Shown: positions 1,113 through 41,760 of the stretch, one piece after another
Layout: every line of letters begins with the position of its first letter
How positions within the stretch are numbered: the first letter of the stretch is position 1
NCBI RefSeq assembly: GCF_006345805.1
Contig: NC_042998.1
Location: 198,400,001-198,464,000 of the forward strand
Length of the DNA: 64,000 nucleotides
Reading direction: 5' to 3'
DNA from: Octopus sinensis
Taxonomy: Eukaryota
Notes under the pieces: generated by a model
Databases searched by the model: none
What the model was told of the DNA's origin: nothing
What the model saw: the letters and a program-made list of their open reading frames with translations, nothing else
Position numbers and translations under genes: made by a program

Positions 1113-1195
1113 CTATATTTCCTTTGGAACTGCTGCACTTCAAAGAACTTAAATCTGCAGGTGGAAGACTGATGTAGGAGTCACTATCAACTTCA
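1113..1195 (-). CDS. FNIP: FNIP exon equivalent to vertebrate exon 6 (83 nt, phase 2 to 1)
   Basis: gttttattgtttcag|T GAA GTT GAT ... GGA AAT ATA G|gtaagt; encodes [27 protein letters not shown]. The phase continues from the previous exon, and it ends in GNI like the recalled vertebrate exon (LLGNIG). Confidence 0.8.
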
Positions 1196-4100
1196 CTGAA
1201 ACAATAAAACAAAAGAGATGTGAGTGTTGAACAAGTAGGCTGCAATAGTCATTAGCGTTGAGACATTTTCAACAGTAAATTCTTGCCACGTACAACGTAG
1301 GCTACTGAACTTGGTAGAGATGACAGTGATCCATGCACACTGTTTAAAAATACTTAGTGCTTTATTAGAGAAAGAAAGAGTGGCTTATAATTTTTTTTAA
1401 GATGTGACATTAAACCTGCTATAATAGACAAACCAGAAGATATATTTTCTGAAACAGTATATCATTGTCATCATTGTTTAAAGTCTGCTTTCCATGCTAG
1501 CATGGGTTGGACGGTTCGACTGGGGTCTGGGAAGCCAGGAGGCTGCACCAGGCTCTAGTCTGATCTGGCAGTGTTTCTACAGCTGGATGCCCTTCCTAAC
1601 GCCATCCACTCCGTGAATGTAGTGGGTGCTTCTTACGAGCCACCGGCACAGAGATATATGTGAATAATTTCTCATAGGCAGTTCTGTGTCCTGAATTTTT
1701 AGCCTCAATATAGTTATGTTCTGGATCTGAAGATTCTGAAATGCAATATTTAGAGCAAATAGCATGAATATTGCTTTGTAATATTCTAAGAAACTAAGAA
1801 ACTATGCTGATTTTGCAAATTGTTGTGGCCAGTGAAAGAATAACCTTTTATTTGACATTGTTGTTCTTGTGACCTGAATAAGAGCCACAAAAGAATTTGA
1901 TGTGAAATACATGAAGAAATTGAATAACTACAAAGAAGAAATCAGTTATTGTTCATATACTGTTCGACAAAGTAAATAATTGTGTTTGCCTCAAACCGAC
2001 TGGTTTACCATAGGTTCCACGCATTTCTTGTTTGCATGACAATGTTATTTGTTTAGAGCTGGCACACAATGCCAAGACAAAGAGACAGAGACAGAAATAC
2101 ACACACACACATAATGGGATTCTTTTCAGTTTCTGCCAACCAAATTCACTCACAAAGTATTGATCGGCCTGGAGATATAGCAGAAAGCAAGATGCTATGC
2201 TGTAGAATTGGAGCCAAAACCACATGACTGCAAAGTGTACCACACAGTATGCATGGTGTTAGGAAGAGTATCCAGTCATAGAAGCCATACCAAAGCAGAT
2301 ATTGAAGCTTGATGAAGAATTCCTCTAGCTCCTCGAATCCTCCAACCCATGCCAACAGAGAAGGTGGATGCTAAATAGTGATGACGATGCTTCATCACAC
2401 ACACACCACTTGAACAACAGTGTAAATGTTTACTGCTTCCATAAACAATACATCCCGTGGCCCCTCAGTTTCATGTGAAGACCAGTAGAACATGGCACCC
2501 CTCTTAAAGGACAAGAGTTAGTAATAGGAACAGCAAGCATTACAGAATATTGCCTCAATAAGTTATACCCAACACAAACCAGAATGACAAAAAGCAAGCA
2601 TAAAACTGATAATATTGATTAAACAGTTTAGCTTAAAAACATAACAGAGATAGAGAACCATAATTTTGAAGGAAGAGTGCAGGAGAGGTTTGTAGTTAAG
2701 ATGTGTGCTTCCAAGCCACACAATGTTCAATTGCAATGCATAGCACATCGGGCAAGTGCTTTCTATGCAAGCTCAATCTACTTTGTGAGTAGATTTGGTA
2801 GATGGAAACTGAAGGAAACCCGGTGCAGCCTTCCAGCATGCCAGCCAATGACTGGCATCCGTGCTAGCAGGGTGCAAAGAGCACCATCTAAGCATGATCG
2901 TTGCCAGAACAGCTAACTGGCTTCCGTGCCAGTGGCATGTAAAAGGTACCATTCGAGCAGGATCGTTGCCAGCACCGCCTAAATGGTTCCATTGCCGGCG
3001 GCACGTAAAAGCACCCACTACACTCTCGGAGTGGTTGGCGTTAGGAAGGGCATCCAGCTGTAGAAACTCTGCCAGATCAAGATTGGAGCTTGGTGCAACC
3101 ATCTGGTTCGCCAGCCCTCAGTCAAAATCGTCCAACCCATGCTAGCATGGAAAGCGGACGTTAAATGATGATGATGATGATTAGTTAGTTGGACATTTAA
3201 CCAACTGACTAATAATAAAGGAGTGGAACTGAACCAGTGTATTGTGTGTGTGTATGTATGTGTGTGTATATATACACACATATACATATATCTACATATA
3301 GATAGATAACTATCGTGTTGTATGGAAACAGGTAAGGATTGGCAGCAGGAAGATTGGCACCAGCCATAGAAAACCTGCCTCAATAAAAACCATCAAACTA
3401 TGTCAGAATAGAAAAGTGGACGTTAAAATGATGATGGTGGGGTATGGCAATACCTGAGTATTTAGTTGACCTGAAAAGCTAAAGGGCAAAGTAGACTTCT
3501 CAGAGTGGGTTCAGGAATATGGAAGAATATATAACAACACACTACAAAGTGTTTTAGCAAGTATTCTGCCAGATCTGTTATCAGCTGTTCTTCTAAGATG
3601 ACATTCCCTCTCTCTCTTTCGGAGAGGCACTGAGCAGCTATACGCACACATACACACACGGCAGTAACTCCCGCCTACCGAATTCAATCACAAAGCTCCT
3701 GTCGGCTCGGGGCTATAGTAGAAGACACCCACCCAAAGTGCCATGCAGTGGGACTGAACCCGAAACCATGTAGCTAGGAAGTTGTAATAACGAAACTCCA
3801 CACTATGGTTTAGCTATTGACACATACCTGCCGGCTTCTTTCTTTTCTTGTTCAGGTAAGAAGACTTTGGTCAACATGAGTTGATGTGGAGATCTGGAAA
3901 GAAAAATCCATAATTAATGTTGAAGTAAGGACATATCACACTAAACGGAAAAATACTTCAATAAAAAAGTGGTACAACAATTACTGCCTCTAATTACGAA
4001 ATGGCAATGGAACAATTTAAGTGTGAAGATCAAGTTAAGAAGACAAAATAGTTAAATAGTGACTCTAATAAAGATGTCCAAAATTAGACAAGAGAGAAGA

Positions 4101-6823
4101 TAAAGGAAGGTTAATGGAAGGATAAATTGAAATTGAAGCTCGAATAGATGATGGTAGTATGGATATGTGATAATGGGAGTTACAATAGAAGAAGGTGTTG
4201 ATAGTATGGCATGTGGTTTTAGCGGATTCGTAGTGATTATAATAAAGATCACTGATTTACTAATGAGACCAAATAGTTTAAATGTTACAGTTAGAGTGTA
4301 GTTAAAAGTGAAGTTGGTGATAGGACAATATCCGAATTATAGCAATTTTTTGGAAGGACTCCGTCGGTTACAACGACGAGGGTTCCGGTTGATCCAAATC
4401 AACAGAACAGCCTGCTCGTGAAATTAACGTGTAAGTGGCTGAGCACTACACAGACACATGTACCCTTAACGTAGTTCTCGGGGATGTTCAGCGTGACACA
4501 GAGAATGACAAGGCTGGCCCTTTGAAATACAGGTACAACAGAAACAGGAAGTAAGAGTGAGAGAAAGTTGTGGTGAAAGAGTACAGCAGGGATCACCACC
4601 ATCCCCTGCCAGAGCCTCGTGGAGCTTTAGGTGTTTTCGCTCAATAAACACTCACAACGTCCGGTCTGGGAATCAAAACCGCAATCCTATGACTGCGAGT
4701 CCGCTGCCCTAACCACTGGGCCATTGCGCCTCCACTATAGCAATTAGTGAATATATTAATTAAAGATTTGAAGACGTACCTAAGGATGTGGACTTTGAGT
4801 GAGGCTCCCTTGTAGGCCATTGCTACAGAACCAAATATCATCTCTTCCAGAATTTCAACATCACTGCCAGGTCGTGGATACTGTTAAGAGAGAAGAAACA
4901 ATTGTGATGAAATAGGTGAGGAAAGCAAGAGGTCGGGATGTCGATATTGGCTGTGTAGGATTTCACAAAACATAGTGCATGAGCACACTCAAACTGACAT
5001 ATGTAATGTTATGTGCTTATCCACATACATATATTGCACATGCACACTCACACATACAGTGCTGTACGGAGGCAACAAAGAACTGAAACTGTGCCATATT
5101 AAGAATAATAATTTAATGTACACCTTAGAAAAGTAAGACAGATAAACAGACAGTGCCAAGATCAACCAGCCAGCAGCCCAGTTGACTTCAAGCTGAAATA
5201 AAATGCTATCAACTCATAAAAAGAAGGAGAAAAACATCAGTTTAACCCTTTCGTTACCAATCCGGCTGAAACCGGCTTTGGCTCTGAGTACAAATGTCTT
5301 GTTTTCATAAGTTTTGAACCAAAATCTTCCACCAAACCTTAGTCACAATGTATGTTCCTAACACTAGCTGAATGATAACAAAGTTATTTTACTAAATTCT
5401 TTGTTAGATTTTAAATTAATTGAAAGAAACACAGAGCATCTCAAAATAAATACAGTAACGAAAGGGTTAAATGAATTCATGAAGCTACCTCAAGGTTCAG
5501 AGGAATATGATGATATTTACAAGAGTTTATATAAACTATATTCATATTACATATATGTTCCAGATAGAGTAGAATTTAATGGCTATAACATCATGTTATA
5601 CGTTAGTTTCTTGCCAATCCTACTTGCTGGGTGAAGATTTTGTCCCCACTGGCAGAGGTCTAACAATTCTGTATGAAAGATCACCTAAAAGAGAGCAATC
5701 ATCAAGAACAAAAACATGGAAACTTAAGCTGATGCTAGTTAAAAATGTCTCAGTGAATGGTAAAATTATTGGCAATCCCTCAATAGACTTATCGGATAAT
5801 CTTCCCAAGATTTATAGCTCATAAATATTGGGTAGGGTTCATGCCATCAATGGAGCTAATCCTAAAAAAACATCAACAGAATTACTAACTAAAACTTCCA
5901 AATTTGGTTTTGTTTCGTTTCCTCTTCTCTGATTATGAAACGGGGAAACTAAAACAAACAAAATCACAATTAAAAATCTGTGTATAAATAAATGAAGACA
6001 ATAGACATGTTAATGATATGAATTTTCTTTCGAGTCTTTTGTGTTTTCTGTAAATTACACAAGGCAGACGGAGGAAAGAGACAAAACATTTAATCGCTTC
6101 CCTCTCTTACTCTTTCCACTCAAAACTGAAACAGATATTTGTAAACCTCTGAGAAAAACTAATGAGAAGAATCACACCAGTTTTACAGAATGCTTCATTT
6201 TCACAATCAAAACAGGTTGGCCTGGGATTTGAAGAAGTCATTCATCAGAAACTAAAGAAATTTATATAAGAGAGAAAAACTGAGGACAGATTACAAGACA
6301 AACAGTGAATAACAACATGGAACTTAATTACAAAGAAATTTATCAGACTTGTACGTTAGCCGTTAGGAATGGGACTGAGATCATTAATGTAAGAAAGCAG
6401 TTATTGTTTAACTATATGTAGGTTCAATGAATTTGAAGAATGTTGTTCAGGAAAGTTAAGCCAAGCCTACAAAAGCATAAAGCAAGAATAACTACATTTT
6501 CTAAACTGAAAGAAATAGATTAAGTCTTTAATATCCAACATTGAGTATTAATAAATTTCAGAAATATTTAGTGGTTGCTTGTGAGAACTAAAATATTGTA
6601 AGTGGAATGATTATAAATTACAAAGATGAATAATAAAGAATAAAGAATAATGAATAGGTGCAGGAGTGGCTGTGTGGTAAGTAGCTTGCTTACCAACCAC
6701 ATGGTTCCGGGTTCAGTCCGACTATGTGGCACCTTGGGCAAGTGTCTTCTACTACAGCCCCAGGCCGACCAATGCCTTGTGAGTGGATTTGGTAGACGGA
6801 AACTGAAAGAAGCCTGTCGTATA

Positions 6824-6878
<55 letters not shown>

Positions 6879-9800
6879 ATGTGTTTGTGTGTCTGTGCTT
6901 GTCCCCCTAGCATTGCTTGACAACCGATGCTGGTGTGTTTACATCCCTGTCACTTAGCGGTTCGGCATAAAGAGACCAATAGAATAAGTACTGGGCTTAC
7001 AAAGAATAAGTCCCGAGGTCGATTTGCTTGACTAAAGGCGGTGCTCCAGCATGGCTGCAGTCAAATGACTGAAACAAGTAAAAGAGTAAAGAATAGAATG
7101 TCTAGTTAGTTCCTACATAGCATTTACATGAGTACTATTATGGATATGGTACATCTAGGGTTCATCTTAGTAGCTTAACTACTCTTGCTCTTCACAATAT
7201 TATTCAATTTTTATCTCCACCTGTTCTAAACAAGGTAGCTATTTAAATTGAATAACGATTTTTTGCCAGGCTGGTAAAAAAATCCATTTCCAAGTTGTAT
7301 GTATAAGCTATATACCTTACACATATCTTTATATATAAAAGTAAGGTTATGTGTCTGTCTCCTACAATTTAGATTCCTAACTACTCCCACATTTTGCGGT
7401 GCAGTTTAACCAAAACTGGGTATCTTATAGTCGTGATTCATATCGAGCCCTTCTGGGTATTAGCGCGCATCTACGATGAGTCTACGATTTTAAAAAAAAT
7501 TTACCATCATTTTTTTCCATTTTAATGCATTTTTTCGCTATTATATAAGGGAAGTAACTCTCTAAAAATGTCTACGATGAGTCAACGATTTAAAAAAAAA
7601 TTTACCATCATTTTTTTTCCATTTTTAATGTATTGTTTTGCTATTTTTTGGCTATAACTCTAAAAATGCTTATATAGTTATTTCCCTTACAAACCCGAGC
7701 AACGCCGGGCGATACTGCTAGTTACAGATAAATACATCTAACTTTATGAGTTACAATCAACGAATACCTTGCCACGTCGACAACCAGATCTATAGGGATT
7801 AGTTGATAAGTAAAGTCAGTGTTTTTAAGTAATAAATGCATTAACTCTTCTTTTGATTGATTCCCCTAACAATGTAAAATAGCATCTATGAAACACACAA
7901 TTATCACTAAAACACCAGTATTAAATTACAAATGATCAAAATGAGTTCTTTTACCAACAAACTATAATGATTTTCAGCCACTATTTTTGAATAATATCTG
8001 AAGAGATGAGATAGTTACTTATAAAATGATGAAGAAATATGGGAGCCAACAAGCTCAAACTCTTAGAAACAACAGCTAAGACATCCTCCAATAATACAAA
8101 GTAAGGAAATATTGGAAACTGTAGTCCTGGATAAGCTAGAGCCAGACCAAAAAAAGAAAAAAAAGAGGGCCATGGCTGGATTGCTTTTGTGTTTTATTGG
8201 ACCATAGCTGAGCTAGGACAAAATATAAGACATGGGTACAGAAAAAACTATGGTCCATAGAGATAGATTTACCAAACAGAAATAACGTCTTGAGTTTGAA
8301 GAAATAATGTAAAAAGCTCAATTGGTAGGAAAAACATCATTCTATAGCAGTGGTTTTCAACCAGGGTTCCGCCAGTAAAGTCCAGGGGTTCCACAAGAAG
8401 TTACAAAACTGCTAACATCGTCAGTAATTTTTAATTCTCCTGTGCAGATATGTGTGCATAAGACTATTAAATTATTGCACAGGGGTTCCTCGAGCCAGTG
8501 GAATGTTTCCTTGGGGTTCCGCTCCAGCAAAAAGTTTGAAAAGCACTGTTCTATAGCAATGTCAGAAAATGCAGAAACGTTAGCAAGCCAGGCGAAATGC
8601 TTAGCAGTATTTCATCTGCCGTTACGTTCTGAGTTCAAATTCCGCCAAGGTCGACTTTGCTTTTCATCCTTTCGGGGTCGATTAAATAAGTACCAGTTAC
8701 GCGCTGGAGTCGATGTAATCGACTTAATCCGTTTGTCTGTCCTTGTTTGTCTCCTCTGTGTTTAGCCCCCTGTGGGCAATAAAGAAATGAAAAATTTGTT
8801 GTCATATCAAGGCGCAAGCATGGCTTTGAGGTAAGAAGCTTGCTATCCAACCAAATGATCATAGGTTTAGTTCCACTGCATGGCACCTTGGTCAAAAGTC
8901 TTCTACTACAACCCCAGGTGAACCAAAGCTTTGTGAGTGGATTTGGTAGACAGAGATTGTATGCATGTACCTTTGTCTTGACATCATGTAATGCTTATGT
9001 TGTCCGTTTCCAGTCTTCAATGCAAAACTTTCTTGGTTATCACAAAATATTACATTACTTGGAAACTGGTGAAGGTTGGGAGCAGGGAGGGTATCCAACC
9101 ACGGGGGGAGGGGGCACTGCCTTAACTAATTCTATCCAATCCATGCTAGTATGGAAAAGCAGATGTTAATCAATTGATGATAACGATGGTTTAGCTATGT
9201 CCTACTTACTGGATCCAACTCTGCTCTTCATTCTTCCAATGTGAATATCAATTCTGCGATCAATGAGCAACTGCTCCTTCCCTATATTGGCGGTCTTGAG
9301 TTTAGCTTAGAAATAATTATCAGCACTAATTTGCAGGCAATGAGCCCATTCATAATTTCTTAAACATGGGACAAAGCACTCCAGTGTCAGCAATTATCAT
9401 TATTACAGTCATTAATGTGCAATGAATAAATTACAGCTAATTCAGAAAGACAATAGGAGTGGGACAGTGAAGGAGGAAAGAAGGAGTGGGAGTGAAATTT
9501 AGTAAGGCTACAGTTGAACGTATCTCTACAAGCAATTACATAAATGGATATTCATTCATCATCCTAATGCAAACATGCACGTACACACACACACAGAAAT
9601 ATATTTGCATTTCATTCTTTGATGGAGTTTGAAATTAAGCAGTTGTGAACAGTGATTCAGCAGGACTATGATCAAAGGTCTTACAATCGCAAGGTCGTGG
9701 TTTCGATTCTCAGACTGGGCGGTATGGTGTGTTCTTGATTAAAGCCCTCCATTTCACACTGCGCCAGTTTGCTCAGAGCGACCCGACCCTGTGATGGACT

Positions 9801-12800
9801 GGAAATCCAGTTTAGGAGGGATGTTGTGATTTCAGTCACAGATACACCATGGACACTGGATAAAAGTTGTTCCGGCCATGACAGCCCTGTCTAACAACTT
9901 AATGTCCAGTTTATTTAAGACAGCAAGATATAATTTGAAGGATGTTTGGTTGTTATTTCTAGGAGGTCAAAAGTTTATGTAGATGCAGTATACAAAATCT
10001 TTGACCCTTGATACTACAATCTATTTCAATTCAATTCAATTCAATTTTTATTGGCTCAAAAAGCAGAAGCAAGGCCATGTAGGGGGACAGGGAGTTATGT
10101 ACAGGGAGGATAGTCATACAAAGAGTTCAGACCATGTCTGGTCAAGAGAGACTTTGAACCGAGCGGTCGTCAGCATCTTCACTATCTCATCCGGCAGCTT
10201 ATTCCAAAGATCTGCAACCCAGACAGAGAAAGCCCCTCTCCTTCGACTGAGATGAAATCGTCGTAGATAGAGCTTTTTGGAGTGACCCCGCAGCCCACGC
10301 TCTGGAGCAGGAGTGAAGAACAGACCCACTGATTCTGATTTCTCTATTTGTAATAGACTTCTTGTTTTGGCAGGATGTGTAGTAAAGAATTTTACTTCAC
10401 AAGCATGTGGCTAGTTTCAGTTTCAATTCCACAGCAGGGCACCTTGGGTGTGTGTCTTCTACTATAACCATGGGTTGACTTCTGACTCATCAGTGAAATT
10501 TGATAGCTGGAAACTATATGGGGATTGACTGTATATATATATCACTATCATCATCATTTAATATCCATTCTCCATGCTGGCATGAGTTGAACAGCATGAC
10601 AGGAACTGGCAAGGCCAGGGGCCGCACCAGGTTCTGTGGCTTGTCTTGCCTTTGTTTCTGCAGTTGGATGCCCTTCAACGATACCACTTAGGGAGTGATA
10701 TCATTGCAACGTAGGCGGCGAGCAGGCAGAAACGTTAGCACGCCGGGCGAAATGCGTAGCCGTATTTCGTCTGCCGTTACGTTGTGAGTTCAAATTCCGC
10801 CGAGGTTGACTTTGCCTTTCATCCTTTTGGGGTCGATAAATTAAGTACCAGTTACGCACTGGGGTTGATGTAATCGACTTAATCTGTTTGTCTGTGCTTG
10901 TTTGTCCCCTCTATGTTTAGCCCCTTTTGGGTAATAAAGAAATAGGTATTTCGTCTGCCGCTACGTTCTGAGTTCAAATTCCGTTGAGGTCGACTTTGCT
11001 TTTCATCCTTCAGGGGTCGATAAATTAAGTACCAATTATGCACTGGGGTCGATGTAATTGACTTAATACCTATGTCTGTCCTTGTTTGTCCCCTTGTAAG
11101 TAGTAAAGAAATAGGTATCGTTGCAACGTATTTTAAGGACAAAGTCCAGTACCCCAGCAATGCAATATGCAAAGACATGGTGTAAAGTGTCTCACTTGAA
11201 AACAAGTAACAGTTGACATCAAGAGGGGTGTCCAGCTGTAGAACAAAGCCTCTGGAAATTTTGTTCAATGCATGCTGACATAGAGAAAGTGAATGTAAAA
11301 ACGAAAATGATGATTGATTAATTGACTGGAAGCACATCACGTACATGGACAATGTGTATCATCAAACGATTTTTAGCACTGTAACTTGCCAATGTTTGGG
11401 CTTAAATGCTAAAGATATGAAATTGCGGCTTCTTTGCTTTTTTTTTTATAATACTTATCAATAAAGATAGAAACAGAATAAACCAATAACTGAATACATT
11501 TCAGACAAGAAGGCAAGTCAAATAATGTGTAATATAGATACAAGAAAACAGTTCTTATGCATAGTAAATGCTGTGAGTGGCTCACCCCTTGGAACGAAGT
11601 ATGTAACCCAACATGTAGTATACCTTAACATGGAATATCATCATCATCATCATCGTTTAATGTCCGTTTTCCGCACTAGCACGGGTTGGACGGTTCGACC
11701 GGGGTGTGGGAAGCCAGGGGCTGCACCAGGCTCCAGTCTGATCTGGCAGAGTTTCTACAGCTGGATGCCCTTCCTAACGCCAACCACTCCGCGAGTGTAG
11801 TGGGTGCTTGTTACGTGCCACCTGCACAAGTGCCAGGGGGGGTCTGGCATCGGCCATGATCGGTTGGAGCTTTTAACGTGCCACCGGCACGGAAGCCAGC
11901 CAAGGCAGCGCTGGCAACGGCCATGTTCGGATGGTGCTTTTTTATGTGCCACCGGCACTTAAAAAAATAGTCAAAGATAAAAGCTTTTGATCTTAACCCT
12001 TTAATATTCAGATTATTCTACCAAATGTGATGCTTGTTTATTCCCATTGCATTGAATTAATCCTGCATTATCTCATAGCTGTGAGATTTCTGCGATGTGA
12101 CTCTTTACTTTGGGAATAATATTGTAGGATAGGGTAAGAGGCTGGATCTGACTGGTTTTGAACAAAAAGGAGGTAAAATATTTAATAATAATAATAATGA
12201 AATTATTATATAGTGCTCAGGTGCACCACAACTTGTCATAAAGTGCATATAAAGCATATGCAGTAATGTACAAATGTCTGGGAAGCGAACAGTGTATGAG
12301 TCAGATACATGCTTGCTTATGTGTATGGAGGGGAGAAAATCAGGTGTAGTGTTGGCGAATCTCAGGAAGCATGGAAGCTTTGAAGGATGCAGTGCTCCGA
12401 CAACTAACAGCTGATGCCGGCAGTTTGTTCCATGCTACAGCAACTCTCAGCGTGAGAAAAAGGAGGTAAAATATTTAGGCCGGATATGGCCGGTTTGAAT
12501 GCTAAAGAGTTAAATCTTGGCACTAAACATGGTCAATACCACTGATAGCATTAATGATGTCTTACGATGTCTTAGAATGTTTTCAAAATACTCACATATA
12601 CAGCATGTAAGCCTTATTTATCTTGTGAAGAGGAGTGTTTAAAAAATACATAACTTTACAGGCCAAATAACACTGACAGTAGCAATAACGATATAAAAGA
12701 AAGTACCATTACTTCCTTGTCCTTATGTTGTAAGTCTGCACAGAATATATTGAAAATAAATGTTTCACACAAAAAAATAAACTCTGGAAATACAATACAA

Positions 12801-15800: not shown

Positions 15801-16952
15801 TGCCTCACTATTTAATCAGTGCCACAAGACAACTTGATCAGGAGTGAGTAAGGTGACACAACACCAGTAACACCATAGCTAATAGCATCATTGATAACAC
15901 CACTACCTATTTCTTTATTACCCACAAGGGGTTAATCACAGAGGGGATAAACAAGGACAAACAAATGGATTATAAGTCAATTATATCGACCCCAGTGTGT
16001 AACTGGTACTTATTTAATTGACTCCAAAAGGATGAAAGGCAAAGTCGACCTCAGCGGAATTTGAACTCAGAACGTAGCGGCAGACGAAATACCTATTTCT
16101 TTATTACCCACAGGGGGCTAAACATAGAGGGGACAGACAAAGGTATTAAGTCGATTACATCGACCCCAGTGCGTAACTGGTACTTAATTTATCGACCCCG
16201 AAAGGTTGAACTCACAACGTAACGGCAGACGAAATACCGCTAAGCATTTCGCCCGGCGTTATAACGTTTCTGCCACTTCGCCGCCTTCGACACCACTACC
16301 ATCACCAGCTAACTTCTACATAGACATTCGATCAACTAATAAACAGCAGCAAAATCTTCAAATCACAGCCATCCATGTTAAAAAAAGGGCATGGTGAAGA
16401 ATGTAATCCAACATGTAACATGTAGTATACCTTAACATGGGATGATCATGGATGAAAGCCTTTGATCCTAAATTTTGGCACTAAACATGACTAACACCAT
16501 TGATACAAATAGTACCATTACATTGATAATAACACCATCACCACCACCACTGATACCAAAGACAACACCACTATTATGATAACACCATTATTAATGATAA
16601 CAACACTGATAACAATAACAGAACTACTGCCACCACCACCACCACTACCAATACAGATAACAATTACATCACAATGAACATCAATAACTCTCCACCACCA
16701 CCACTAACATCAATGACAACAATAGTGACACCACTGATGACAACACCACCACCACCAACCCTACTGGTACCAACACACCAGCACCACTGATCCAAGTACA
16801 TAGGTGAGTGGGAAACGACCCATGTGTCTACAGTGGATACACTTACTAGTCCGTGTGAACATTTTTCCCAGAGAGAATCACTGCATTATTTTGGTGCACT
16901 TAACAGAATTTCCTGGAAAAAGATAATAGCAGCACCACTAATAAAAACAGGT

Positions 16953-16983
<31 letters not shown>

Positions 16984-19900
16984 CACTTTGTGTACTCCCA
17001 TAACACACAAATATCTACTCAAGCAAAAGCGTAACAAGGGAAACAACCGCACCAATTCTATCGGTTAAACCAACACCACCAACACAATCAGCATCACTAT
17101 AGGTAACAACCACCAATAACATGACCACCACTGCCAATACCAACACCAAAGCATAATACAAAAAAAAAAAAAAAACACCAACACAACACAATCAATTTAA
17201 GACAAAGTGTGCTACTGGCTAATGAAAAGAGAGAAAAGCCCAAACCCAGTCACAAAGGTGATTGAGAGAGGGCCCGTGAAGAGACAAAAAGCCCAAGCCG
17301 AAGCACATAGGTGGGTGAGAAAGGACCCATGTGTCTACAGTGGATGATACACTTACTAGTCCGTGTGAACATTTCCCAGGGAGCATCACTGCATTATTTC
17401 GGCGCACATGCAGAAACTCCTAGAAAAAGATAGTTTATAAAGAAGTGATAAAGACAGGTTTACATGCACCCATGCACCCATGCACCCACACACACACACA
17501 CATATATATATTATGTACACTCACATAACACATGTATAATATTTACACAAAAAACAAACAAAAAACATAACAAAGGAAACATTTATTTGCATGGATTTTT
17601 TCTTCATGAATGAATGAATGAAAAAAAAGAAATAAAAAGAAACATACATGTGTAAACTGATAAATATATAATACAATATCTTAATTAGCATTTTGCAATC
17701 AACATTTTCATATATAATTTTTTAAAAGTCTACCAAAACTGAAATAATTTAGAGATGCCATCAACGTGGAAAACAAGTGGTAAGTTAGTTAGTTAGTTAG
17801 TTAGTTAATTTTTTGGCTCAAAAAGCAAAAAGCAAGGCCATGTAGGGGGGACATGGAGTTATGTACGGGGTGGTGTTCATGTAAAGAGTTCAGGCCACTT
17901 GAGGTCAAGGGAGACTTTGAACCGAACGGTCGTCGGCATCTTCACCATCTCGTCTGGAAGCTTATTCCACGGATCCACAACCCGGACGGAGAAAGCCCCT
18001 CTCCTTCGATTGAGATGAAATCGTCGCAGATAGAGCTTTTCGGAATGACCCCGCAGCCGACGCTCTGGAGCAGGAGTGAAGAACAGCTCTTTCGAGAGGT
18101 TAGTGTTGACATATTTAATGCATAAAGCATTAAAAATATAATTAGAAATAAATAAAGTGACAAGAAATAGTTAAAAATCATTCAATGATAATATTTCCTT
18201 TCTTTCAGTAATTATGATAAATAACTGTATAATTCAATCTTAATTTAAGCTAATTAGCAAAGCCTAGCCTTTCCATACAAGTTATACATTGTTAACATAG
18301 TAAACAAATGTATTTCATTATAACAACAAAGATTTGTACATTTACTCAATGTTTCATTCATCACTAATTTGGCAAGTACAGAAAGACTACACTTAGCTAA
18401 AGAGGTTCAAATAAGACTGAAACAATGTCTAAATTTATCTCCCCATTTACCAGGAAAATGAAAATAATATTTGTTTCTACTCTAGGTACAATGCCTGAAA
18501 TTTTTGGGGAGTGGGATCAGTCAATTAGATTGACCCTAGTATGCAACTGGTACTTAATTTATCAACCCCAAAAGGATGAAAGGTAAAGTCGACCTCAGCA
18601 GAATTTGAATTCAGAATGTAAAGACAGATGAAATACCACTAAGCATTTCGCTCAGCATGCTAACGTTTCTGCCAGCTCGCTGCCTTAAATGAAGATAATA
18701 TTAGCTATTTATATATTTTTCCTCTTCACATATTTCAAGAATGATTGTGTGATATTACACATATTAAATATACTGGTTTCAAATTTTAGCACAAGGCCAG
18801 CAACCTCTGGAGAGTGGGTAAGTCAATTACATTGAGCCCAGTACTCAACTGATACTTATTTTATCGACTCATGAAAGGATGAAAGATAAAGTTGATCTCA
18901 GCGGAATTTTAAACTCACAACACAAAGATGGACAAAATGCCACTATGCATTTTATCCGGTCTACTTACAATTCGGCCAGCTTGGTGCCTTACACATGTTG
19001 AATATATTAACACTAATTTAACTACCTGTCTGTATCACCACATATACATTTCGATTATTCAGTTAGATTATTTGGTCATCTATGTATTAAATATCATCAT
19101 CATCATCGTTTAATGTCCACTTTCCATGCTAGCATGGGTTGGACGATTTTGACTGAGGGCTGGCAAACCAGATGGCTGCACCAGGCTCCAATCTTGATCT
19201 GGCAGAGTTTCTACAGCTGGATGCCCTTCCTAACGCCAACCACTCTGAGAGTGTAGTGGGTGCTTTTACGTGCCACTGGCACGGGGCCAGTCAGGCAGTA
19301 CTGGCAACGACCTCACTCGAATCCTTTACACGTGCCACCGGCACAGGTGCCAGTAAGGTGACGTTGGTAACGATCACGGTCGGATGGTGCTCTTAGCACC
19401 CTACTAGCATGGGGTTCAAGTGCCAGTAAGGTGATGCTGCTAATGATCATGCTCAAATGGTGTCTTTTACGTGCCACCGGCACGGAGGCCAGATAGCCAC
19501 TCTGGCAACGATCATGCTTGGATGGTGCTCTTGGTACCGTACTAGCACGGGGCTCAAGAGTCAGTAAGGTGACGCTGGTAACGATCATCTATGTATTAAA
19601 TTTGTAATCACTAAATCATCAAAATCGGAACCCTGATCTTTCATTACTAACAAATGCATGTTACAACGACCACATACAAAATAGAATTAGTCTGATCCTT
19701 TTACCTGTGTAAATAAAATCTACTGCAGCTATAGAAAACAGAACTTTGTTACTCCTATTCCTGTTTGTCTACAGAAAGTAATAAGCAGAGGGGACACCAC
19801 CAAAAGAAAAGCCATTAGAAAACCGATTATAGCAGCGACTCCATCTAAGAATATCTGAAGAAGGAATTGTATTCCGAAATATCATATCAGACTATGAATG

Positions 19901-26100: not shown

Positions 26101-28356
26101 ATGGAAAAATAATTTGGAACATAGAAAACATTTAAGTATCTTGAGAAGTGCAGAAACCAATTATTCAATTGGATTTTCATTAGCACTTCCTGTCTTCAGA
26201 CGGCACACGCAACCCAGATACACACATTTCAGGCACTTACACATTTGATCAGGTTTTTTGTTTGTTTTTAAGGACAATCCATTTCATTGACAAACCTACA
26301 AGGCTTCACTCAAAATACTTTCAAGTAGTTTCTATATCTTTACTACCAGTACTACAACACTTTGCAAACAAGCTGATTGAATACCAGCTTCTACTTAAAA
26401 CTACTCCACGTTTTCATCTAAATAAAAACAACTATAAAACAATCTATACTGAACACCAACTATTGCCTTTACATAGTTACTAGCAGTATTGCCCGGCGTT
26501 GCTCAGGTTTGTTTCGACCCTTTAGAATTGGAATTTTTGAAAAGTAAAAAGTTTGCATTAAGTAGCTTGTTATTCTTTTTAAGTGAACATTTCCCTGGTT
26601 GAAATACACTGAAAAATGGCAACACAGCAGTAAAAAAATCGTAAAAAATAGGGATTTTCATAGAAAAAAAGCACCTTTTTGATGCAAATACATTTTAGTC
26701 TTAACATGGTCCGATTTGAATTTTTTCTTCTATGGAAGGAAGAGCAAGCCTTCTTCTATCATACTCTCAATTTTGGTCAACTTGTGCCGCAGGGTCTCGG
26801 AGGAGATAGTGTTAGTCGAAGGCTACCAAACCTGCCACACACACACGGACAACTTCAGTTTTATATATAGAGAGATTACTATCAGCCAATCAAGAAAAGA
26901 TGAAATGGTTAGAGCATGTGTCTCAAGATGGGGTGTCGCAATATCTTAGTGTAACATGAGTTACTTTAAAATCAGTAAATCAGTCGTAAGTAGGTTAACA
27001 AATCAATAAAAGTTGCAATAAAGTTTTAAATCTACTTTTGAATAGAAATGCTTTATATTAAGCTTTGTATACTCATGGTGCTGGAGTGCACGTTTTGTTG
27101 GTTTGGTTTAAAATTGAAGAAGGGAGTGGGACAAAAAATGTTGAGAAACAATGGGGTCATGTTTCTCAGACTGACAGGTAAAGATGAAAATCAAGAATAT
27201 AATTCTGGGAAAAGACATGAATTGATAAATGTGTATGTGGTTGTGAATACAGAAGTTTGTTTCATCATCATCATCATCATCATCATTGTTTAACATCTGC
27301 TTTCCATGCTAGCATGGGTTGGACGATTTGACAGGGGTCTGATGAACCAGATGGCTGCACCAGGCTACGATCTGATCTAGCAGAGTTTCTACAGCTGGAT
27401 GCCCTTCCTAACGCCAACCACTTCGAGAGTGTAGTGGGTGCTTTTACGTGCCACCGGCTCAAGGGCAAGTCAGGCGGTACTGGCAACGGCCAGTCCAGCA
27501 GCACTGGCAACGACCTTGCTCAAATGTTTTTTCCACATGCCTCCAGCACAAGTGCCAGTAAGGCGACGCAGGTAACGATCATGCTCGAATGGTGCTTTTT
27601 ACATGCCACCGGCATGGAAGCCAGTTTGTTGCTCTGGCAATGATCACGCTCGGATGGTGCTCCTAGCGCTCCACTAGCATGAATGCGAGTCACCGAATTT
27701 GATTTCGATTTCACTTGCCTCAACAGGTCTTCGCAAGCAGAGTTTAGTGTCCAATGAAGGAAAGGTACGCATTATATAAGTGGGCTGATTACACCCAAGG
27801 CATATGCCACGATGTTATGGTCTAACTTGGCTTGCCGAGACTTCTCAAGCACAGCATATTTCCAAAGGTCACAATTACTAGTCATTGCCTCGGTGAAGCC
27901 CAATGTTCGAAGGTCATGCTTCACCACCTCATCCCAGGTCTTCCTGGGTCTACCTCTTCCAGAGGTTCCCTCAACCACTAGAGTGTGGCACATTTTCACA
28001 TTCAAGATAGTCATATGGTTGATGAAACAAATGACTTATCTACAGCCAGAATAACAATATAGAAGAACACCCCCACATTATAGAAGAGTTCCTTTCTATG
28101 AAGCTCACTTTCCCACTAACCTTTATGTAATAATTGAAATATGCTTCTAGAAAACTTTTTCTGGGGTAAAAAAAAAAAAAAAAAAGAAAAGTAGAATAAC
28201 CAGTTTTATAATCATAACAGGAGTCCCCATAGCAAAAGGAGTCTTTTAAAATGAATGTAACAATTATTGAAGCTTTGTCTAGATATATCTTTCTGAGTGG
28301 TATAATTCTCAAATATGTAAAAAAATTGGTAAAAGGTATGTTTGGGGATTATCATA

Positions 28357-31400: not shown

Positions 31401-32188
31401 TCCCCTGACTAAAAAGTAAAATGGTCATAGGCACAACCCTTTCTCCTTTGACAATAAGTATATAAAAAAAACTAGACAGTAACACTATTGATGTATCAAA
31501 GTATAAGTTAGTTGTCAACATCATCGTTTAACATCCGTTTTCCATTCTAGCATGGGTTTGATGGTTCGACCGGGGTCTGGGAAGCCAGGAGGCTGCATCA
31601 GGCTCCAGTCTGATCTGGCAGTGTTTCTACGGCTGGATGCCCTTCCTAACACCAACCACTCCGTGAATGTAGTGGGTGCTTTTTACGTTCCACCAGCACA
31701 GGTACGACGGGAGGCTGGCAGCGGCCACAATCAGTTGGTGCTTTTTACGTGCCACCAGCACAGAAGAGGTCGAGGTGGCACTGGCATTGGCCACGTTCGG
31801 ATGGTGCTTTTTACGTGCCACTGGCACAGGTATCACAGCTGCAATTTTCATTTGATATTACAGATAATAGCTTAGAGCCTTAACTTCAAAAGTGCTTTTT
31901 GTCTGTTAGTAAATGAATCAAATTTCAGTGTGTGTGTGTTTGAACGTACACACATATGCACACACACATACATATACAAGTATGTAACAATCATAGAGAA
32001 ATAATCACCATCTGAACACTGGTCTCTACATAAGAAATGTGGTTAACAAAGCAAATAAACATACCTCGTTGTTGTCTTCCATCTGTGGGAAAGCTTTTGA
32101 ATCAAACAAAAGCTGACGGCCACGCAGGTCACTGTCCAGGTACACAACCAACCGGACTTGCTTCTTGTCAAATTCAGGTGAAATCCAT
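1113..32188 (-). CDS. FNIP: Folliculin-interacting protein (FNIP1/FNIP2 ortholog), N-terminal portion; multi-exon, 5' and 3' incomplete in window
   Basis: Exons have canonical AG/GT sites and compatible phases (2-0, 0-2, 2-2, 2-1). Peptides [64 protein letters not shown] and [11 protein letters not shown] match recalled FNIP motifs ([60 protein letters not shown]). Confidence 0.93.
3828..3893 (-). CDS. FNIP: FNIP exon equivalent to vertebrate exon 5 (66 nt, phase 2 to 2)
   Basis: tttttctttccag|A TCT CCA CAT CAA CTC ATG TTG ACC AAA GTC TTC ... GGC AG|gtatgt; encodes [21 protein letters not shown](S). Confidence 0.93.
4346..4733 (-). mobile_element. tRNA-derived SINE (family D)
   Basis: Minus-strand head ggaggcgcaatggcccagtggttagggcagcggactcgc...ggttttgattcc has A/B-box-like motifs but no tRNA acceptor stem, followed by a long non-tRNA body. 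Confidence 0.75.
4780..4880 (-). CDS. FNIP: FNIP exon equivalent to vertebrate exon 4 (101 nt, phase 0 to 2)
   Basis: cttctctcttaacag|TAT CCA CGA ... ATC CTT AG|gtacgt; encodes [33 protein letters not shown](R). Confidence 0.97.
5246..5466. mobile_element. piggyBac-type MITE
   Basis: TTAA|CCCTTTCGTTAC ... GTAACGAAAGGG|TTAA. Confidence 0.88.
6657..7092 (+). mobile_element. tRNA-derived CORE-like SINE (family B) with internal (TA)n(TG)n
   Basis: Head ggagtggctgtgtggtaag...ggttcagtcc, CORE-like ccttgggcaagtgtcttct, tail (aaaagagt)n. Confidence 0.85.
7326..7721 (+). mobile_element. Non-autonomous Helitron (subfamily 1)
   Basis: A|TCTTTATATATAAAAG ... CCCGAGCAACGCCGGG CGATACTG CTAG|T: 5' TC, subterminal hairpin, 3' CTAG, A^T target. 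Confidence 0.82.
8348..8548. mobile_element. hAT-type MITE
   Basis: TIRs CAGTGGTTTTCAAC / TTTGAAAAGCACTG; perfect 8-bp TSD ttctatag (8340-8347, 8549-8556). Confidence 0.88.
10024..10325 (-). mobile_element. Shorter copy of the same CR1/L2-like LINE 3' end with (GAATT)n tail
   Basis: [48 protein letters not shown]; tail ttcaattcaattcaatt on plus. Confidence 0.85.
10714..11120 (+). mobile_element. tRNA-derived SINE family C, dimeric form
   Basis: Head ggcggcgagc(t/a)ggcagaaacgttagc, B-box-like gagttcaaattcc. The second unit restarts at gtatttcgtctgcc. TSD ttgcaacgta (10704-10713, 11121-11130). Confidence 0.85.
11997..12509. mobile_element. piggyBac-type MITE (second family) carrying a nested LINE fragment
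   Basis: TTAA|CCCTTTAATATTCAGA ... TTTGAATGCTAAAGAG|TTAA. Confidence 0.8.
12185..12456 (-). mobile_element. Short 3' copy of second CR1/L2-like family nested in a piggyBac-like MITE
   Basis: Flanked by 21-bp direct repeat aaaaaggaggtaaaatattta (12164-12184, 12457-12477). Confidence 0.85.
13761..14170 (+). mobile_element. SINE family C, dimeric form
   Basis: Two tandem units as above. Confidence 0.85.
15907..16285 (-). mobile_element. SINE family C, dimeric form
   Basis: Two tandem units; TSD acaccactac (15897-15906, 16290-16299). Confidence 0.85.
16847..16912 (-). pseudogene. Degenerate tandem copy of the probable exon 3 (66 nt, in-frame TAA, splice sites intact)
   Basis: attatctttttccag|GAAATTCTGTTAAGTGCACCAAAATAA...CACACGGACTA|gtaagt; has +1 and +2 insertions relative to 17357-17419 and stops in all three frames. 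Confidence 0.6.
17357..17419 (-). CDS. FNIP: Probable FNIP exon 3 (63 nt, phase 0 to 0)
   Basis: ctatctttttctag|GAG TTT CTG ... GGA CTA|gtaagt; open only in frame 0, encodes [21 protein letters not shown]. There is weak resemblance to vertebrate exon-3 (F/S)(G/A)KCCQ. It retains CpGs that are decayed in its duplicate. Confidence 0.55.
17784..18101 (-). mobile_element. Shorter copy of the same CR1/L2-like LINE 3' end
   Basis: Near-identical to 41051-41360, with a gttagttagttag tail. Confidence 0.85.
20140..20372 (-). mobile_element. Short 3' copy of second CR1/L2-like family
   Basis: Reverse complement of about 51640-51845, with a (TAA)n tail on plus. Confidence 0.85.
20497..20717. mobile_element. 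piggyBac-type MITE (same family as 5246-5466)
   Basis: TTAA|CCCTTTCATTAC ... GTAACAAAAGGG|TTAA; body near-identical. Confidence 0.88.
21970..22372 (+). mobile_element. SINE family B
   Basis: Full-length copy with the same architecture as 6657-7092. Confidence 0.85.
26480..26875 (-). mobile_element. Non-autonomous Helitron (subfamily 2)
   Basis: Same terminal structure, different body shared with 30144-30720. Confidence 0.8.
27264..28015 (-). mobile_element. 5'-truncated RTE-clade LINE: ORF C-terminus plus 3' UTR (VNTR, family A tail)
   Basis: ORF 27772-28014(-) [42 protein letters not shown] is a typical RTE C-terminal GRPRKTW..V..D motif. It is contiguous with the family A VNTR and (GAT)n tail. 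Confidence 0.8.
28575..28832. repeat. Rearranged copy of a dispersed repeat forming a 48-bp inverted repeat
   Basis: Arms 28642-28689 and 28785-28832 with 1 mismatch; a colinear, unrearranged relative lies at about 32948-33150. Confidence 0.85.
30084..30877. mobile_element. piggyBac-type MITE (second family) carrying a nested Helitron
   Basis: TTAA|CCCTTTAATGTTCAGA ... TCAATGCTAAAGGG; the body matches 11997-12509 on both sides of the Helitron. Confidence 0.75.
30144..30720 (-). mobile_element. Non-autonomous Helitron (subfamily 2)
   Basis: Same termini; carries an additional ~200-bp internal segment relative to 26480-26875. Confidence 0.8.
30893..31075 (+). mobile_element. Decayed tRNA-headed SINE (V-domain-like)
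   Basis: tggcttagtggttaagg...ggtttcgattcctgg head and gaccagcatcctgtccag-gggg motif; a similar relic lies at about 9660-9830. Confidence 0.5.
32065..32188 (-). CDS. FNIP: FNIP exon equivalent to vertebrate exon 2 (124 nt, phase 2 to 0)
   Basis: tttctcttaaaatctag|A TGG ATT TCA CCT GAA TTT ... AAC AAC GAG|gtatgt; encodes [41 protein letters not shown]. Confidence 0.95.
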
Positions 32189-34029: not shown

Positions 34030-34390
34030 GGATGGAACCTACACTCGCCTCCTTATGAGAGCTCAAAATCTCTCGTGGAAGCACCATCCAACCAAAATGC
34101 AAATATATGGGAAACTACCACCTGTGTCATCTCTTGTGAAAGGTAGAAGAGTCCAGTTTACTGGACATTGTTGTAGAGCTGAAAACGAGGTAATTTCTAC
34201 TCTTCTCCTCTGGAAGCCATCTGCTCGCGATACCAGAGGGCGCACACTCTCCTACCCTGATGTAATCTCCAGGGATACAGGCATCCAGCAACAGGACCTC
34301 CGTAATGCCATGATGGACCGTGAAGTCTGGTGTAGCATGGTAAATTCCATTGCCTCGACCACGGTCGAACAATGATGAATGAATGATGAT
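34030..34390 (+). mobile_element. RTE-type LINE 3' fragment (second family)
   Basis: ORF LSWKHHPTKMQIYGKLPPVSSLVKGRRVQFTGHCCR...SYPDVISRDTG...AMMDREVW, then a tgatgaatgaatgatgat tail. A short copy of the same 3' end lies at about 15277-15395 on the minus strand. Confidence 0.8.
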
Positions 34391-41050: not shown

Positions 41051-41760
41051 GTTAGTTAGTTAGTTAATTATTTGGCTCAAAAAGCAAAACGCAAGGCCAT
41101 GTAGGGGGGCACGGAGTTATGTACAGGGTGGTGTTCATGTAAAGAGTTCAGGCCACTTGAGGTCAAGGGAGACTTTGAACCGAGCGGTCGTCAGCATCTT
41201 TACTATCTCGTCCAGCAGCTTATTCCACGGATCCGCAACCCGGATGGAGAAAGCCCCTCTCCTTTGATTGAGATGAAATCGTCACAGATAGAGCTTTTCG
41301 GAGTGACCCCGCAGCCGACATTCTGGAGCAGGAGTGAAGAACAGCTCTTTCGAGAGGTTACACCTTCCACTTATGATTTTGTGAGCAAGAATGAGATCAC
41401 CACAGCAGCAGCGTTTTTCTAGAGAATAAAGGTCGAGCGTCTTCAGCCTTTCTTCATAAGACAAATGCTTGAAACCCAGAACCATTAAGGTAGTTCTTGT
41501 AATGATTTATCTAAATGACTTGGGACTAAAACAACAACGTTGAAATATATGCTGTACAGTGGCAATGGGGTCAGGCCCTCCTCCAACACTGGCAAAAGCA
41601 AAGCAGTTTGCATACATCTTGAACAACTGCAAATCATCACCTGGCTGAAGGGGGGACTCTACAAGGATGATGTCTAAGGAAGGTAGAACCTGGAAATGGT
41701 GATTATTGGGTTGCGTGGGTAGCGTAGGCACGGTATGGGTAACGAGAAGGGTAGCAGTAA
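41051..41760 (-). mobile_element. CR1/L2-like LINE 3' fragment with (TAAC)n tail
   Basis: MVLGFKHLSYEERLKTLDLYSLEKRCCCGDLILAHKII...[19 protein letters not shown]...WNKLP is the CR1-group ORF2 C-terminus. Confidence 0.85.

What the first reader, a model, noticed from the sequence alone, without database searches (positions are those of the whole stretch)
16795..17580. Tandemly duplicated FNIP exon: one coding copy and one stop-containing twin with intact splice sites
Seen: a ~250-bp block occurs twice (about 16795-17045 and 17305-17580). Copy A (17357-17419) is a 63-nt open phase-0 exon. Copy B (16847-16912) keeps a strong acceptor (tctttttccag) and the identical donor (CTA|gtaagtgt) plus ~45 nt of downstream intron. 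However, B has +1 and +2 insertions, an in-frame TAA, and both CpGs of GTGCGCCGA decayed to GTGCACCAA. Inference: A is under coding constraint. B is either a dying duplicate or a retained poison exon that could couple alternative splicing to NMD and tune FNIP (mTORC1/AMPK regulator) levels; it could also be the relic of a mutually exclusive pair.
Basis: partly seen in the sequence, partly recalled or inferred. Interest (0 to 1): 0.7.

Follow-up and report, generated by a model that had tools for sequence, protein, structure and literature searches.

The report
Duplicated FNIP mini-exon with decaying twin
A 63-base optional exon of the octopus FNIP gene was copied about 500 bases downstream within the Octopus lineage, and the copy drifts like unconstrained DNA (still readable in O. 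bimaculoides, broken by two insertions and a stop codon here), so this is ordinary exon duplication and decay, not a demonstrated regulatory 'poison exon'.

Summary
A block of about 250-290 bp occurs twice on the minus strand, 507 bp apart, and nowhere else in the window. It lies in the 27-kb intron between two clear FNIP exons.

Copy A (17419-17357) is a real exon that is already annotated. RefSeq isoform X1 of O. bimaculoides and O. sinensis contains its 21 residues verbatim, and isoform X2 skips them, so it is an optional cassette exon. In Argonauta hians it is a single copy with 21/21 identical residues and only two synonymous differences.

Copy B (16912-16847) arose after the Argonauta/Octopus split and before the O. 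bimaculoides split. All five A/B differences shared by both species, including both CpG losses, are derived in B. In O. bimaculoides B is still an open 63-nt frame. The +1 and +2 insertions, and therefore the TAA, are specific to the window's lineage.

B changes at the same rate as its flanking intron (pN/pS about 0.8; 5 substitutions and 2 indels between species, against 0 for A). No annotated isoform contains it.

Best reading: a decaying tandem exon duplicate. The stop is not conserved between species, which speaks against an established poison exon. No transcript data could be reached to test whether B is spliced. Interest is low to moderate.

The parts
32065..32188 (-). FNIP exon 2 (..P)[41 protein letters not shown]. 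It ends in phase 0 and supplies the upstream donor for exon A, copy B or the next constitutive exon.
   Evidence: Matches Pfam FNIP_N and human FNIP2/FNIP1 PDB chains. 100% identical to O. sinensis XP_029656928.1. Sequence read.
17357..17419 (-). Copy A: a 63-nt, phase 0/0 cassette exon encoding [21 protein letters not shown]. It is included in isoform X1 (941 aa) and skipped in X2 (920 aa).
   Evidence: sequence. (present verbatim in O. bimaculoides and O. sinensis X1, absent from X2). (single copy in Argonauta, pN 0, pS 0.126).
17420..17581 (-). Upstream intron flank of copy A that lies inside the duplicated block. It contains the polypyrimidine tract/acceptor and a (GT)n/(GGGTGCAT)n microsatellite.
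17301..17356 (-). Downstream intron flank of copy A shared with copy B (gtaagtgt...cacctatgtgctt). It is also conserved in Argonauta.
16847..16912 (-). Copy B: a 66-nt duplicate of exon A with AG/GT intact, +1 and +2 insertions and an in-frame TAA at codon 9 ([21 protein letters not shown]). It is a pseudo-exon in this species.
   Evidence: The O. bimaculoides orthologue is an open 63-nt frame. Its divergence is neutral-like.
16794..16846 (-). Downstream intron flank of copy B. Homology to A ends at about 16794, where a GGT-rich low-complexity stretch begins.
16913..17045 (-). Upstream intron flank of copy B inside the duplicated block (acceptor and (GT)n microsatellite).
4780..4880 (-). Next constitutive FNIP exon, [33 protein letters not shown](R). 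Its acceptor is used after exon 2 or exon A.
3828..3893 (-). Following FNIP exon, (R)[21 protein letters not shown].
1113..1195 (-). Following FNIP exon, [28 protein letters not shown].

Best explanation
The window holds part of the FNIP gene of Octopus sinensis or O. vulgaris, on the minus strand.

Copy A is an old, conserved 63-nt cassette exon. When included, it adds 21 residues to the variable linker of the N-terminal FNIP_N region, between the WxxPEFD...LFDSKA block and the [15 protein letters not shown] block. When skipped, exon 2 joins the next exon in frame.

A short tandem duplication copied this exon and its immediate intron flanks to a site about 510 bp downstream. It happened after the Argonauta/Octopus split and before the O. 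bimaculoides split. The block is about 290 bp, and the copies start 507-514 bp apart.

The new copy (B) was never under coding constraint and has drifted. Five substitutions, including both CpG-to-CpA changes, accumulated before the species split. In the window's lineage three more substitutions and two insertions followed, which create the in-frame TAA. B is therefore a decaying pseudo-exon.

B's splice signals look intact because too little time has passed to destroy them, and perhaps because gene conversion from A refreshed its 3' part.

Shown: the duplication, its age bracket, the direction of the changes, the constraint on A, the neutral-like rate of B, and the annotated inclusion and skipping of A.

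Inferred: that B is not, or only negligibly, spliced; and that if it were spliced, the transcript would be an NMD target.
For: The gene is FNIP. The block occurs only twice, and locally.

Exon A is verbatim in XP_014777165.1 and XP_029656928.1 and absent from the X2 isoforms, which are shorter by exactly 21 aa.

Both copies are present in O. bimaculoides, 514 bp apart. Argonauta has a single copy.

Octopus A versus Argonauta: 0 nonsynonymous and 2 synonymous differences, while the block aligns at about 74% overall. This block is the only unique collinear alignment in the 27-kb intron.

Window versus O. bimaculoides: A has 0/63 differences. B has 5 substitutions and 2 indels. B's flanks have 7/100 each. 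Fisher p=0.029.

B versus A in O. bimaculoides: pN 0.105, pS 0.129. About 80% of random 7-substitution derivatives of the exon stay open, so the open B in O. bimaculoides needs no selection to explain it.

The 90%-identity cluster that holds all Octopus FNIP models contains no B-containing isoform.
Against: B keeps a good polypyrimidine tract, AG and a consensus gtaagt donor in both species, so the sequence alone does not rule out splicing.

The 3' part of B (last 20 nt of the exon plus about 55 nt of intron) is only about 5% diverged from A, against about 29% for the 5' part. This could reflect selection on a donor-proximal element rather than gene conversion.

Net +3 of the two insertions restores the exit frame, which would matter only if B were used.

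All rate comparisons rest on a 63-nt exon and very few substitutions. No RNA-seq junction data could be examined.
Confidence: 0.75

Rival explanations
1. B is a functional poison exon. It is spliced in under some conditions, its TAA triggers nonsense-mediated decay, and this tunes FNIP dosage and hence FLCN-FNIP control of Rag GTPases/mTORC1 and AMPK signalling.
For: B has intact AG/GT with good surrounding signals and an in-frame TAA far upstream of later exon junctions. It sits next to a regulated cassette exon whose flanks are conserved. The low divergence of B's donor-side segment from A would fit retained splice competence.
Against: The stop and both frameshifting insertions are absent in O. 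bimaculoides, so any poison function is at most lineage-specific and young. B and its flanks diverge between species at the same roughly 7-9% as intron, unlike known poison exons, which are typically highly conserved. No B-containing model is annotated. No transcript evidence was obtainable.
Confidence: 0.1
2. A and B were, or in O. bimaculoides still are, alternative coding versions of the same 21-residue segment (a young substitution or mutually exclusive pair). The window's species has recently lost the second version.
For: In O. bimaculoides B is an open 63-nt frame of the same length and phase as A, with AG/GT, encoding EILHVHQNNAVTLSGKCSHGL. It keeps the GKCSHGL end that resembles the Pecten linker motif PKCYHGL.
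Against: pN/pS of B against A is about 0.8, and 80% of random derivatives with the same number of changes stay open. O. bimaculoides RefSeq lists only X1 (with A) and X2 (with neither), and nothing with B. Transcripts with neither exon exist, so the pair is not mutually exclusive. Both units are multiples of 3, so double inclusion would not be removed by a frameshift. B was disabled without any visible compensation in the window's lineage.
Confidence: 0.1
3. The repeat is part of a dispersed transposable element, or a chance similarity, and neither copy is an exon.
For: The intron is packed with multi-copy SINE-like repeats, including directly beside the block at 15904-16290 and 17792-18102. 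The Pfam FNIP_N score does not rise when A is added (64.1 against 63.5 bits).
Against: The block has exactly two copies in the window, two in the 83-kb O. bimaculoides locus and one in the Argonauta locus, always at the same intronic position. A is present in two RefSeq protein isoforms and is perfectly conserved at the protein level in Argonauta.
Confidence: 0.02

Closest known systems
Tandem exon duplications within animal genes (Kondrashov & Koonin 2001 and Letunic, Copley & Bork 2002, from my own knowledge; reviewed in PMC9013439)
   Same: An exon and its immediate intron flanks are copied in tandem within the same intron. The copy has the same strand, length class, phase and splice signals. 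Many such copies are unannotated. [quoted passage not shown]
   Different: The source exon here is itself an optional cassette exon. The copy shows no sign of having been recruited: its rate is neutral-like and it is disabled in one of the two species that carry it.
Mutually exclusive duplicated exon pairs, e.g. U2AF1 exons 3/Ab (PMC5224494) and the human MXE catalogue (PMC5740500)
   Same: Two homologous exons of equal length lie a few hundred bases apart.
   Different: In true pairs both copies are open and conserved, and exactly one is included. Here one copy carries a stop, transcripts with neither copy are annotated, and no B-containing isoform is known.
Poison (NMD-coupled) cassette exons, e.g. 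those of SR-protein genes (my own knowledge)
   Same: An intronic unit with usable-looking splice sites and an in-frame stop, whose inclusion would be predicted to lead to decay.
   Different: Classical poison exons are strongly conserved, often ultraconserved, and their inclusion is documented. Here the stop is species-specific, the sequence drifts at the intron rate, and inclusion is undocumented.
Vertebrate FNIP1/FNIP2 N-terminal linker
   Same: Exon A sits where human FNIP2 has an unaligned linker of about 49 residues (78-126) between the two conserved N-terminal blocks. Other lophotrochozoan FNIPs have a 45-55 residue linker with an early Cys, for example Pecten ..QPKCYHGL...
   Different: In cephalopods the linker is reduced to 21 residues, or to none when the exon is skipped. 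Homology of GKCSHGL to PKCYHGL is suggestive only: MAFFT did not place them in the same columns.

Membership tests
FNIP (folliculin-interacting protein) gene | N-terminal FNIP_N domain sequence (Pfam PF14636) in the exons flanking the finding | tested here: met
   64.1 bits against a cutoff of 25. Human FNIP2 PDB chains match at E=1e-17. Exons are 100% identical to O. sinensis FNIP1 isoform X1.
FNIP (folliculin-interacting protein) gene | Copy A is part of an FNIP coding sequence | tested here: met
   Its 21 residues are verbatim in XP_014777165.1 and XP_029656928.1. These are predicted RefSeq models, and the underlying reads were not seen.
Tandem exon duplication | Significant sequence similarity between an exon and a nearby stretch of the same intron, on the same strand | tested here: met
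   73% identity over 284 columns, E=1.6e-40, 507 bp apart, same strand.
Tandem exon duplication | Not a dispersed repeat | tested here: met
   Two copies in the window, two in the O. bimaculoides locus and one in the Argonauta locus. Only these three loci were searched, not whole genomes.
Tandem exon duplication | Copy retains exon-like boundaries (AG...GT) at homologous positions | tested here: met
Mutually exclusive exon pair | Both exons have open frames of compatible length and phase | tested here: not met
   In the window B has an in-frame TAA and two indels. The feature is met only in O. bimaculoides.
Mutually exclusive exon pair | Exactly one of the two exons is present in every transcript | tested here: not met
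   The X2 isoforms and other models contain neither exon. No model contains B.
Poison exon (NMD-coupled cassette) | In-frame premature stop on inclusion, upstream of later exon junctions | tested here: met
   TAA at codon 9 of B. At least three coding exons follow within the window.
Poison exon (NMD-coupled cassette) | Documented inclusion in transcripts, with NMD sensitivity | not testable with these tools
   No RNA-seq junction data are reachable.
Poison exon (NMD-coupled cassette) | Conservation of the exon and of its stop across species | tested here: not met
   The stop and the indels are absent in O. bimaculoides. The divergence of B equals that of its intron flanks. B is absent altogether in Argonauta.

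The most novel reading that the evidence does not exclude
In the O. sinensis/O. vulgaris lineage, a still splice-competent in-frame duplicate of a regulated FNIP cassette exon was converted by two small insertions into a stop-carrying exon. That would be the birth of an NMD-coupled switch on FNIP dosage caught at an early stage, with O. bimaculoides preserving the in-frame precursor state.
Probability: 0.07. Interest if true: 0.5.

Novelty: new member of a known kind. Interest (0 to 1): 0.25.

Why it matters
The finding matters little beyond annotation.

Exon A is already in RefSeq. The new information is as follows:
- Exon A is an old, protein-level-conserved optional exon. It is intact in Argonauta, although the A. 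hians gene model omits it; the O. vulgaris model omits it as well.
- It has an Octopus-specific tandem twin whose decay can be dated between two speciation events.

This makes a tidy, small example of what usually happens to a duplicated exon: one copy is frozen and the other drifts and then breaks. It also warns against reading intact splice sites plus a stop codon as a poison exon.

If B were shown to be spliced, the three-species series would be a useful natural experiment on how NMD-coupled exons arise. The series runs from a single copy, to an open twin, to a stop-bearing twin.

Tried and rejected
- **Short protein queries.** Two word-index protein searches found nothing useful, although exact matches exist in the collection. 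These used 96 aa of exon 2 + A + next exon and the 243-aa N-terminus. The HMMER scan of representatives and a full-length query were what worked.
- **Pfam scoring.** Scoring with A, without A, or with B (X at the stop) gave 64.1, 63.5 and 64.2 bits. The family profile says nothing about the linker, so it could not be used as evidence for or against A.
- **Closest species.** O. vulgaris and O. sinensis loci could not be fetched because the gene range exceeds 100 kb. B could not be compared between the two closest species, and the window's species could not be fixed. The residues fit both and exclude O. bimaculoides (KKEAG against KKETG).
- **Truncated products.** I did not try another route.
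- **Transposable element or chance repeat.** Rejected.
- **Other open pseudo-exons in the intron.** A simple scan found only one other open phase-0/0 unit with decent sites, 7537-7505 (33 nt). It has no homology support.
- **Other scans.** Rfam found no hits and tRNA search found none. The bacterial promoter/terminator scan is not meaningful for this animal locus.
- **Literature.** No paper links FNIP with octopus. No relevant FNIP1 poison-exon paper was found.
Full report

Yes. On the + strand, 16794-17045 and 17301-17581 align at 73% identity over 284 columns (E=1.6e-40; alignment). Two perfectly identical cores, of 29 nt and 22 nt, occur exactly twice in the 64-kb window and never in 100 shuffles. 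Everything else that the region matches in the window is either a neighbouring multi-copy SINE-like repeat (15904-16290, 17792-18102) or a microsatellite. The block is therefore a local two-copy duplication with a start-to-start spacing of 507-510 bp.

The features read on the minus strand are as follows.
- Copy A (17419-17357) is ...ctatctttttctag|GAG TTT ... GGA CTA|gtaagtgt. It is 63 nt, open, and encodes [21 protein letters not shown].
- Copy B (16912-16847) is ...ttatctttttccag|GAA ATT CTG TTA AGT GCA CCA AAA TAA ...CTA|gtaagtgt. It is 66 nt and encodes [21 protein letters not shown].

**2. What gene is this?**

The minus strand carries FNIP.
- Exon 2 (32188-32065) and the next constitutive exon (4880-4780) match Pfam FNIP_N (64 bits against a cutoff of 25).
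- They also match human FNIP2 and FNIP1 chains in the PDB (E=1e-17 and 4e-14).
- Two further exons lie at 3893-3828 and 1195-1113.
- All of them are 100% identical to Octopus sinensis FNIP1 isoform X1. O. vulgaris has the same residues, and O. bimaculoides differs (KKETG against KKEAG).
- Exon 2 ends in phase 0 and the 4880 exon starts in phase 0. A 63-nt unit can therefore be included or skipped without changing the frame.

**3. Is copy A a real exon?**

The family profile cannot tell. The Pfam score is the same with A, without A, or with B (64.1, 63.5 and 64.2 bits), because this part of FNIP is a variable linker.

Relatives decide the question. A HMMER scan of 1.84 billion representatives, followed by a full-length search and cluster listings, gave the following.
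- O. bimaculoides isoform X1 (XP_014777165.1, 941 aa) and O. sinensis isoform X1 (XP_029656928.1, 941 aa) both contain ...[38 protein letters not shown]..., which is exon A verbatim.
- The X2 isoforms of both species (920 aa, exactly 21 fewer) join exon 2 directly to the next exon.
- So do the O. vulgaris model CAI9716948.1 and the Argonauta hians model GAB1598979.1.
- So do full-length cDNA contigs of a more distant cephalopod. These encode 919 aa, are 74% identical, and are indexed in 66 blocks of the collection (Logan run assemblies; four contigs fetched, each from a different sequencing run).

A is thus an already annotated optional cassette exon, not a constitutive one.

**4. How old is A, and is it constrained?**

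The Argonauta hians locus (L002) has one copy only. Both window copies hit the same place. It lies at L002 39427-39489, between the orthologues of exon 2 and the next exon, with AG and gtaagtgt intact.

It encodes the same 21 residues. The two nucleotide differences are both synonymous (pN 0 over 47 sites, pS 0.126). The 394-column block that contains it aligns at about 74% overall. This roughly 390-bp block is the only unique collinear alignment in the whole 27-kb intron between the two genera, apart from one weak 64% stretch. All other hits are dispersed repeats.

Exon A is therefore under purifying selection on its peptide. It sits in a conserved intronic island, as regulated alternative exons often do.

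Other lophotrochozoan FNIPs have a 45-55 residue linker at this position with an early cysteine. The scallop motif QPKCYHGL resembles GKCSHGL in exon A. I regard this as suggestive only, because MAFFT did not align the two motifs.

**5. When did B arise, and how has it evolved?**

The O. bimaculoides locus (L001) is syntenic with the window throughout. It holds both copies, 514 bp apart. Argonauta holds one. The duplication therefore falls between the Argonauta/Octopus split and the O. bimaculoides/window-species split.

With Argonauta as outgroup, all five differences shared by both species' B copies are derived in B. They are GAG>GAA, TTT>ATT, CGC>CAC, CGA>CAA and CCT>TCT.

The decisive point is the O. 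bimaculoides B sequence: GAAATTCTGCATGTGCACCAAAATAATGCAGTGACGCTTTCTGGGAAATGTTCACACGGACTA. It is 63 nt, open, and encodes EILHVHQNNAVTLSGKCSHGL. The +1 T, the +2 AA, and therefore the TAA arose only in the window's lineage.

Rates between the two Octopus species:

| Segment | Differences |
|---|---|
| Exon A | 0 in 63 nt |
| Copy B | 5 substitutions and 2 indels |
| B upstream flank (100 nt) | 7 |
| B downstream flank (100 nt) | 7 |

Fisher's test for A against B gives p=0.029. Both lineages contributed changes to B: 3 substitutions and 2 indels in the window's lineage, and 2 exonic substitutions plus 1 donor-region change in O. bimaculoides.

B against A in O. bimaculoides gives pN 0.105 and pS 0.129, a ratio of about 0.8. 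In a simulation, 80% of random 7-substitution derivatives of the exon remained open. The chance that AG and GT both survive 8% divergence is about 0.72.

Neither the open frame in O. bimaculoides nor the intact splice dinucleotides therefore require selection. None of the six members of the 90% cluster holding all Octopus FNIP models contains B, not even in O. bimaculoides, where it would be in frame.

**6. Best explanation (confidence 0.75)**

A short tandem duplication copied a conserved optional FNIP exon and its immediate flanks. The copy was never recruited, has drifted neutrally, and has been disabled in the O. sinensis/vulgaris lineage.

Shown: the duplication, its age bracket, the polarity of the changes, the constraint on A, the neutral-like rate of B, and the annotated inclusion and skipping of A.

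Inferred: that B is not appreciably spliced. If it were, the TAA lies upstream of at least three further exon junctions and would be expected to trigger NMD.

**7. Rival explanations**

- **Poison exon (0.1).** The sequence features are compatible. However, the stop is not shared with the sister lineage, the exon is not conserved above the intron rate, and no inclusion is documented. At most it would be a newborn poison exon.
- **Alternative coding twin, or relic of a mutually exclusive pair (0.1).** B is open in O. bimaculoides. However, its substitutions look neutral, no B isoform is annotated, and neither-exon transcripts exist. Both units are multiples of three, so nothing would enforce exclusivity.
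- **Transposon or chance repeat (0.02).** Rejected on copy number and conserved position.

**8. An unexplained detail**

Divergence between A and B is very uneven along the block (O. bimaculoides).

| Part of the block | A versus B differences |
|---|---|
| 60 nt upstream plus first 43 nt of exon | 29 of 101 (29%) |
| Last 20 nt of exon plus 57 nt of downstream intron | 4 of 77 (5%) |

Fisher's test gives p=6e-5, and the window shows the same picture. Between species, B's downstream intron still changes at about 9% (5 of 57).

I therefore favour a gene-conversion tract from A over B's 3' part before the species split, or a mosaic 5' flank, over continuing selection on B's donor side. This is not settled. 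It is the one observation that leaves some room for a functional donor at B.

**9. Comparison with what is known**

This is a member of the well-described class of tandem exon duplications. [quoted passage not shown] It fails two defining tests for mutually exclusive pairs. It also fails the conservation test for classical poison exons, while inclusion and NMD sensitivity could not be tested.

No paper linking FNIP and octopus was found.

**10. Verdict**

A is coding and constrained, though it is a cassette exon already in RefSeq. B is a dying duplicate.
- The more exciting readings lack support.
- Novelty: a new member of a known kind.
- Interest: 0.25.

Noticed in passing
L002 39427-39489 (Argonauta hians); window 17357-17419: The A. 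hians gene model GAB1598979.1 and the O. vulgaris model CAI9716948.1 omit the 21-residue exon. In the Argonauta genome it is intact, with AG/GT and 21/21 identical residues. This is either a likely annotation gap or evidence that the skipped form dominates.
   Followed up: partly
window 17300-17356 and 16794-16866; L001 48906-48985 and 49420-49495: Divergence between the two copies is mosaic. It is about 29% in the upstream flank and first 43 nt of the exon, and about 5% in the last 20 nt plus the downstream intron (p=6e-5). This suggests gene conversion between the tandem copies.
   Followed up: partly
window 17227-17328: A 53-bp unit is repeated 1.9 times (78% matches) in the intron just downstream of exon A. 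It is also present in O. bimaculoides and recognisable in Argonauta. Homology of copy B to copy A ends inside the first unit.
   Followed up: no
window 15904-16290 and 17792-18102: Multi-copy dispersed repeats lie directly beside the duplicated block. The first has copies at 36025-35609, 11102-10710, 14170-13761, 8788-8571 and 53012-53176. The second has copies at 41051-41360 (94%) and 10047-10323 (87%). Both are probably SINE-like elements, and many ORF-list entries across the window are translations of such repeats.
   Followed up: no
window 51240-51593 (+), 10114-10329 (-), 34055-34375 (+), 27772-28014 (-): Short ORFs whose translations look to me like C-terminal tails of non-LTR retrotransposon ORF2 proteins (for example ...HLEFASPVWNPY...). 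This is from memory and was not tested against any library.
   Followed up: no
window 9294-9569 vs L002 41489-41758: A second, weaker collinear match between the Octopus and Argonauta introns (64% over 286 columns, E=6e-19). It could be another conserved intronic element or an old repeat.
   Followed up: no
window 16480-16790 and 17060-17150: CCA/CAC-rich low-complexity stretches (GGT-rich on the gene strand) follow each copy of the block. They have internal 9-18-nt periodicities. They may mark the rest of an original tandem unit of about 510 bp, or an expanding minisatellite.
   Followed up: no
Pecten maximus XP_033750955.1 (P0002) residues ~70-80 vs exon A: The scallop FNIP linker contains QPKCYHGL, which resembles PGKCSHGL of exon A. 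Several other molluscs have a Cys at the same relative place. This may mean that the cephalopod cassette exon is the remnant of an ancestral constitutive linker.
   Followed up: partly
tool behaviour (vs 29-30): The word-indexed protein search returned nothing for a 96-aa query that is an exact substring of two proteins in its own collection. Short queries can miss exact matches, so an empty result there is not evidence of absence.
   Followed up: yes
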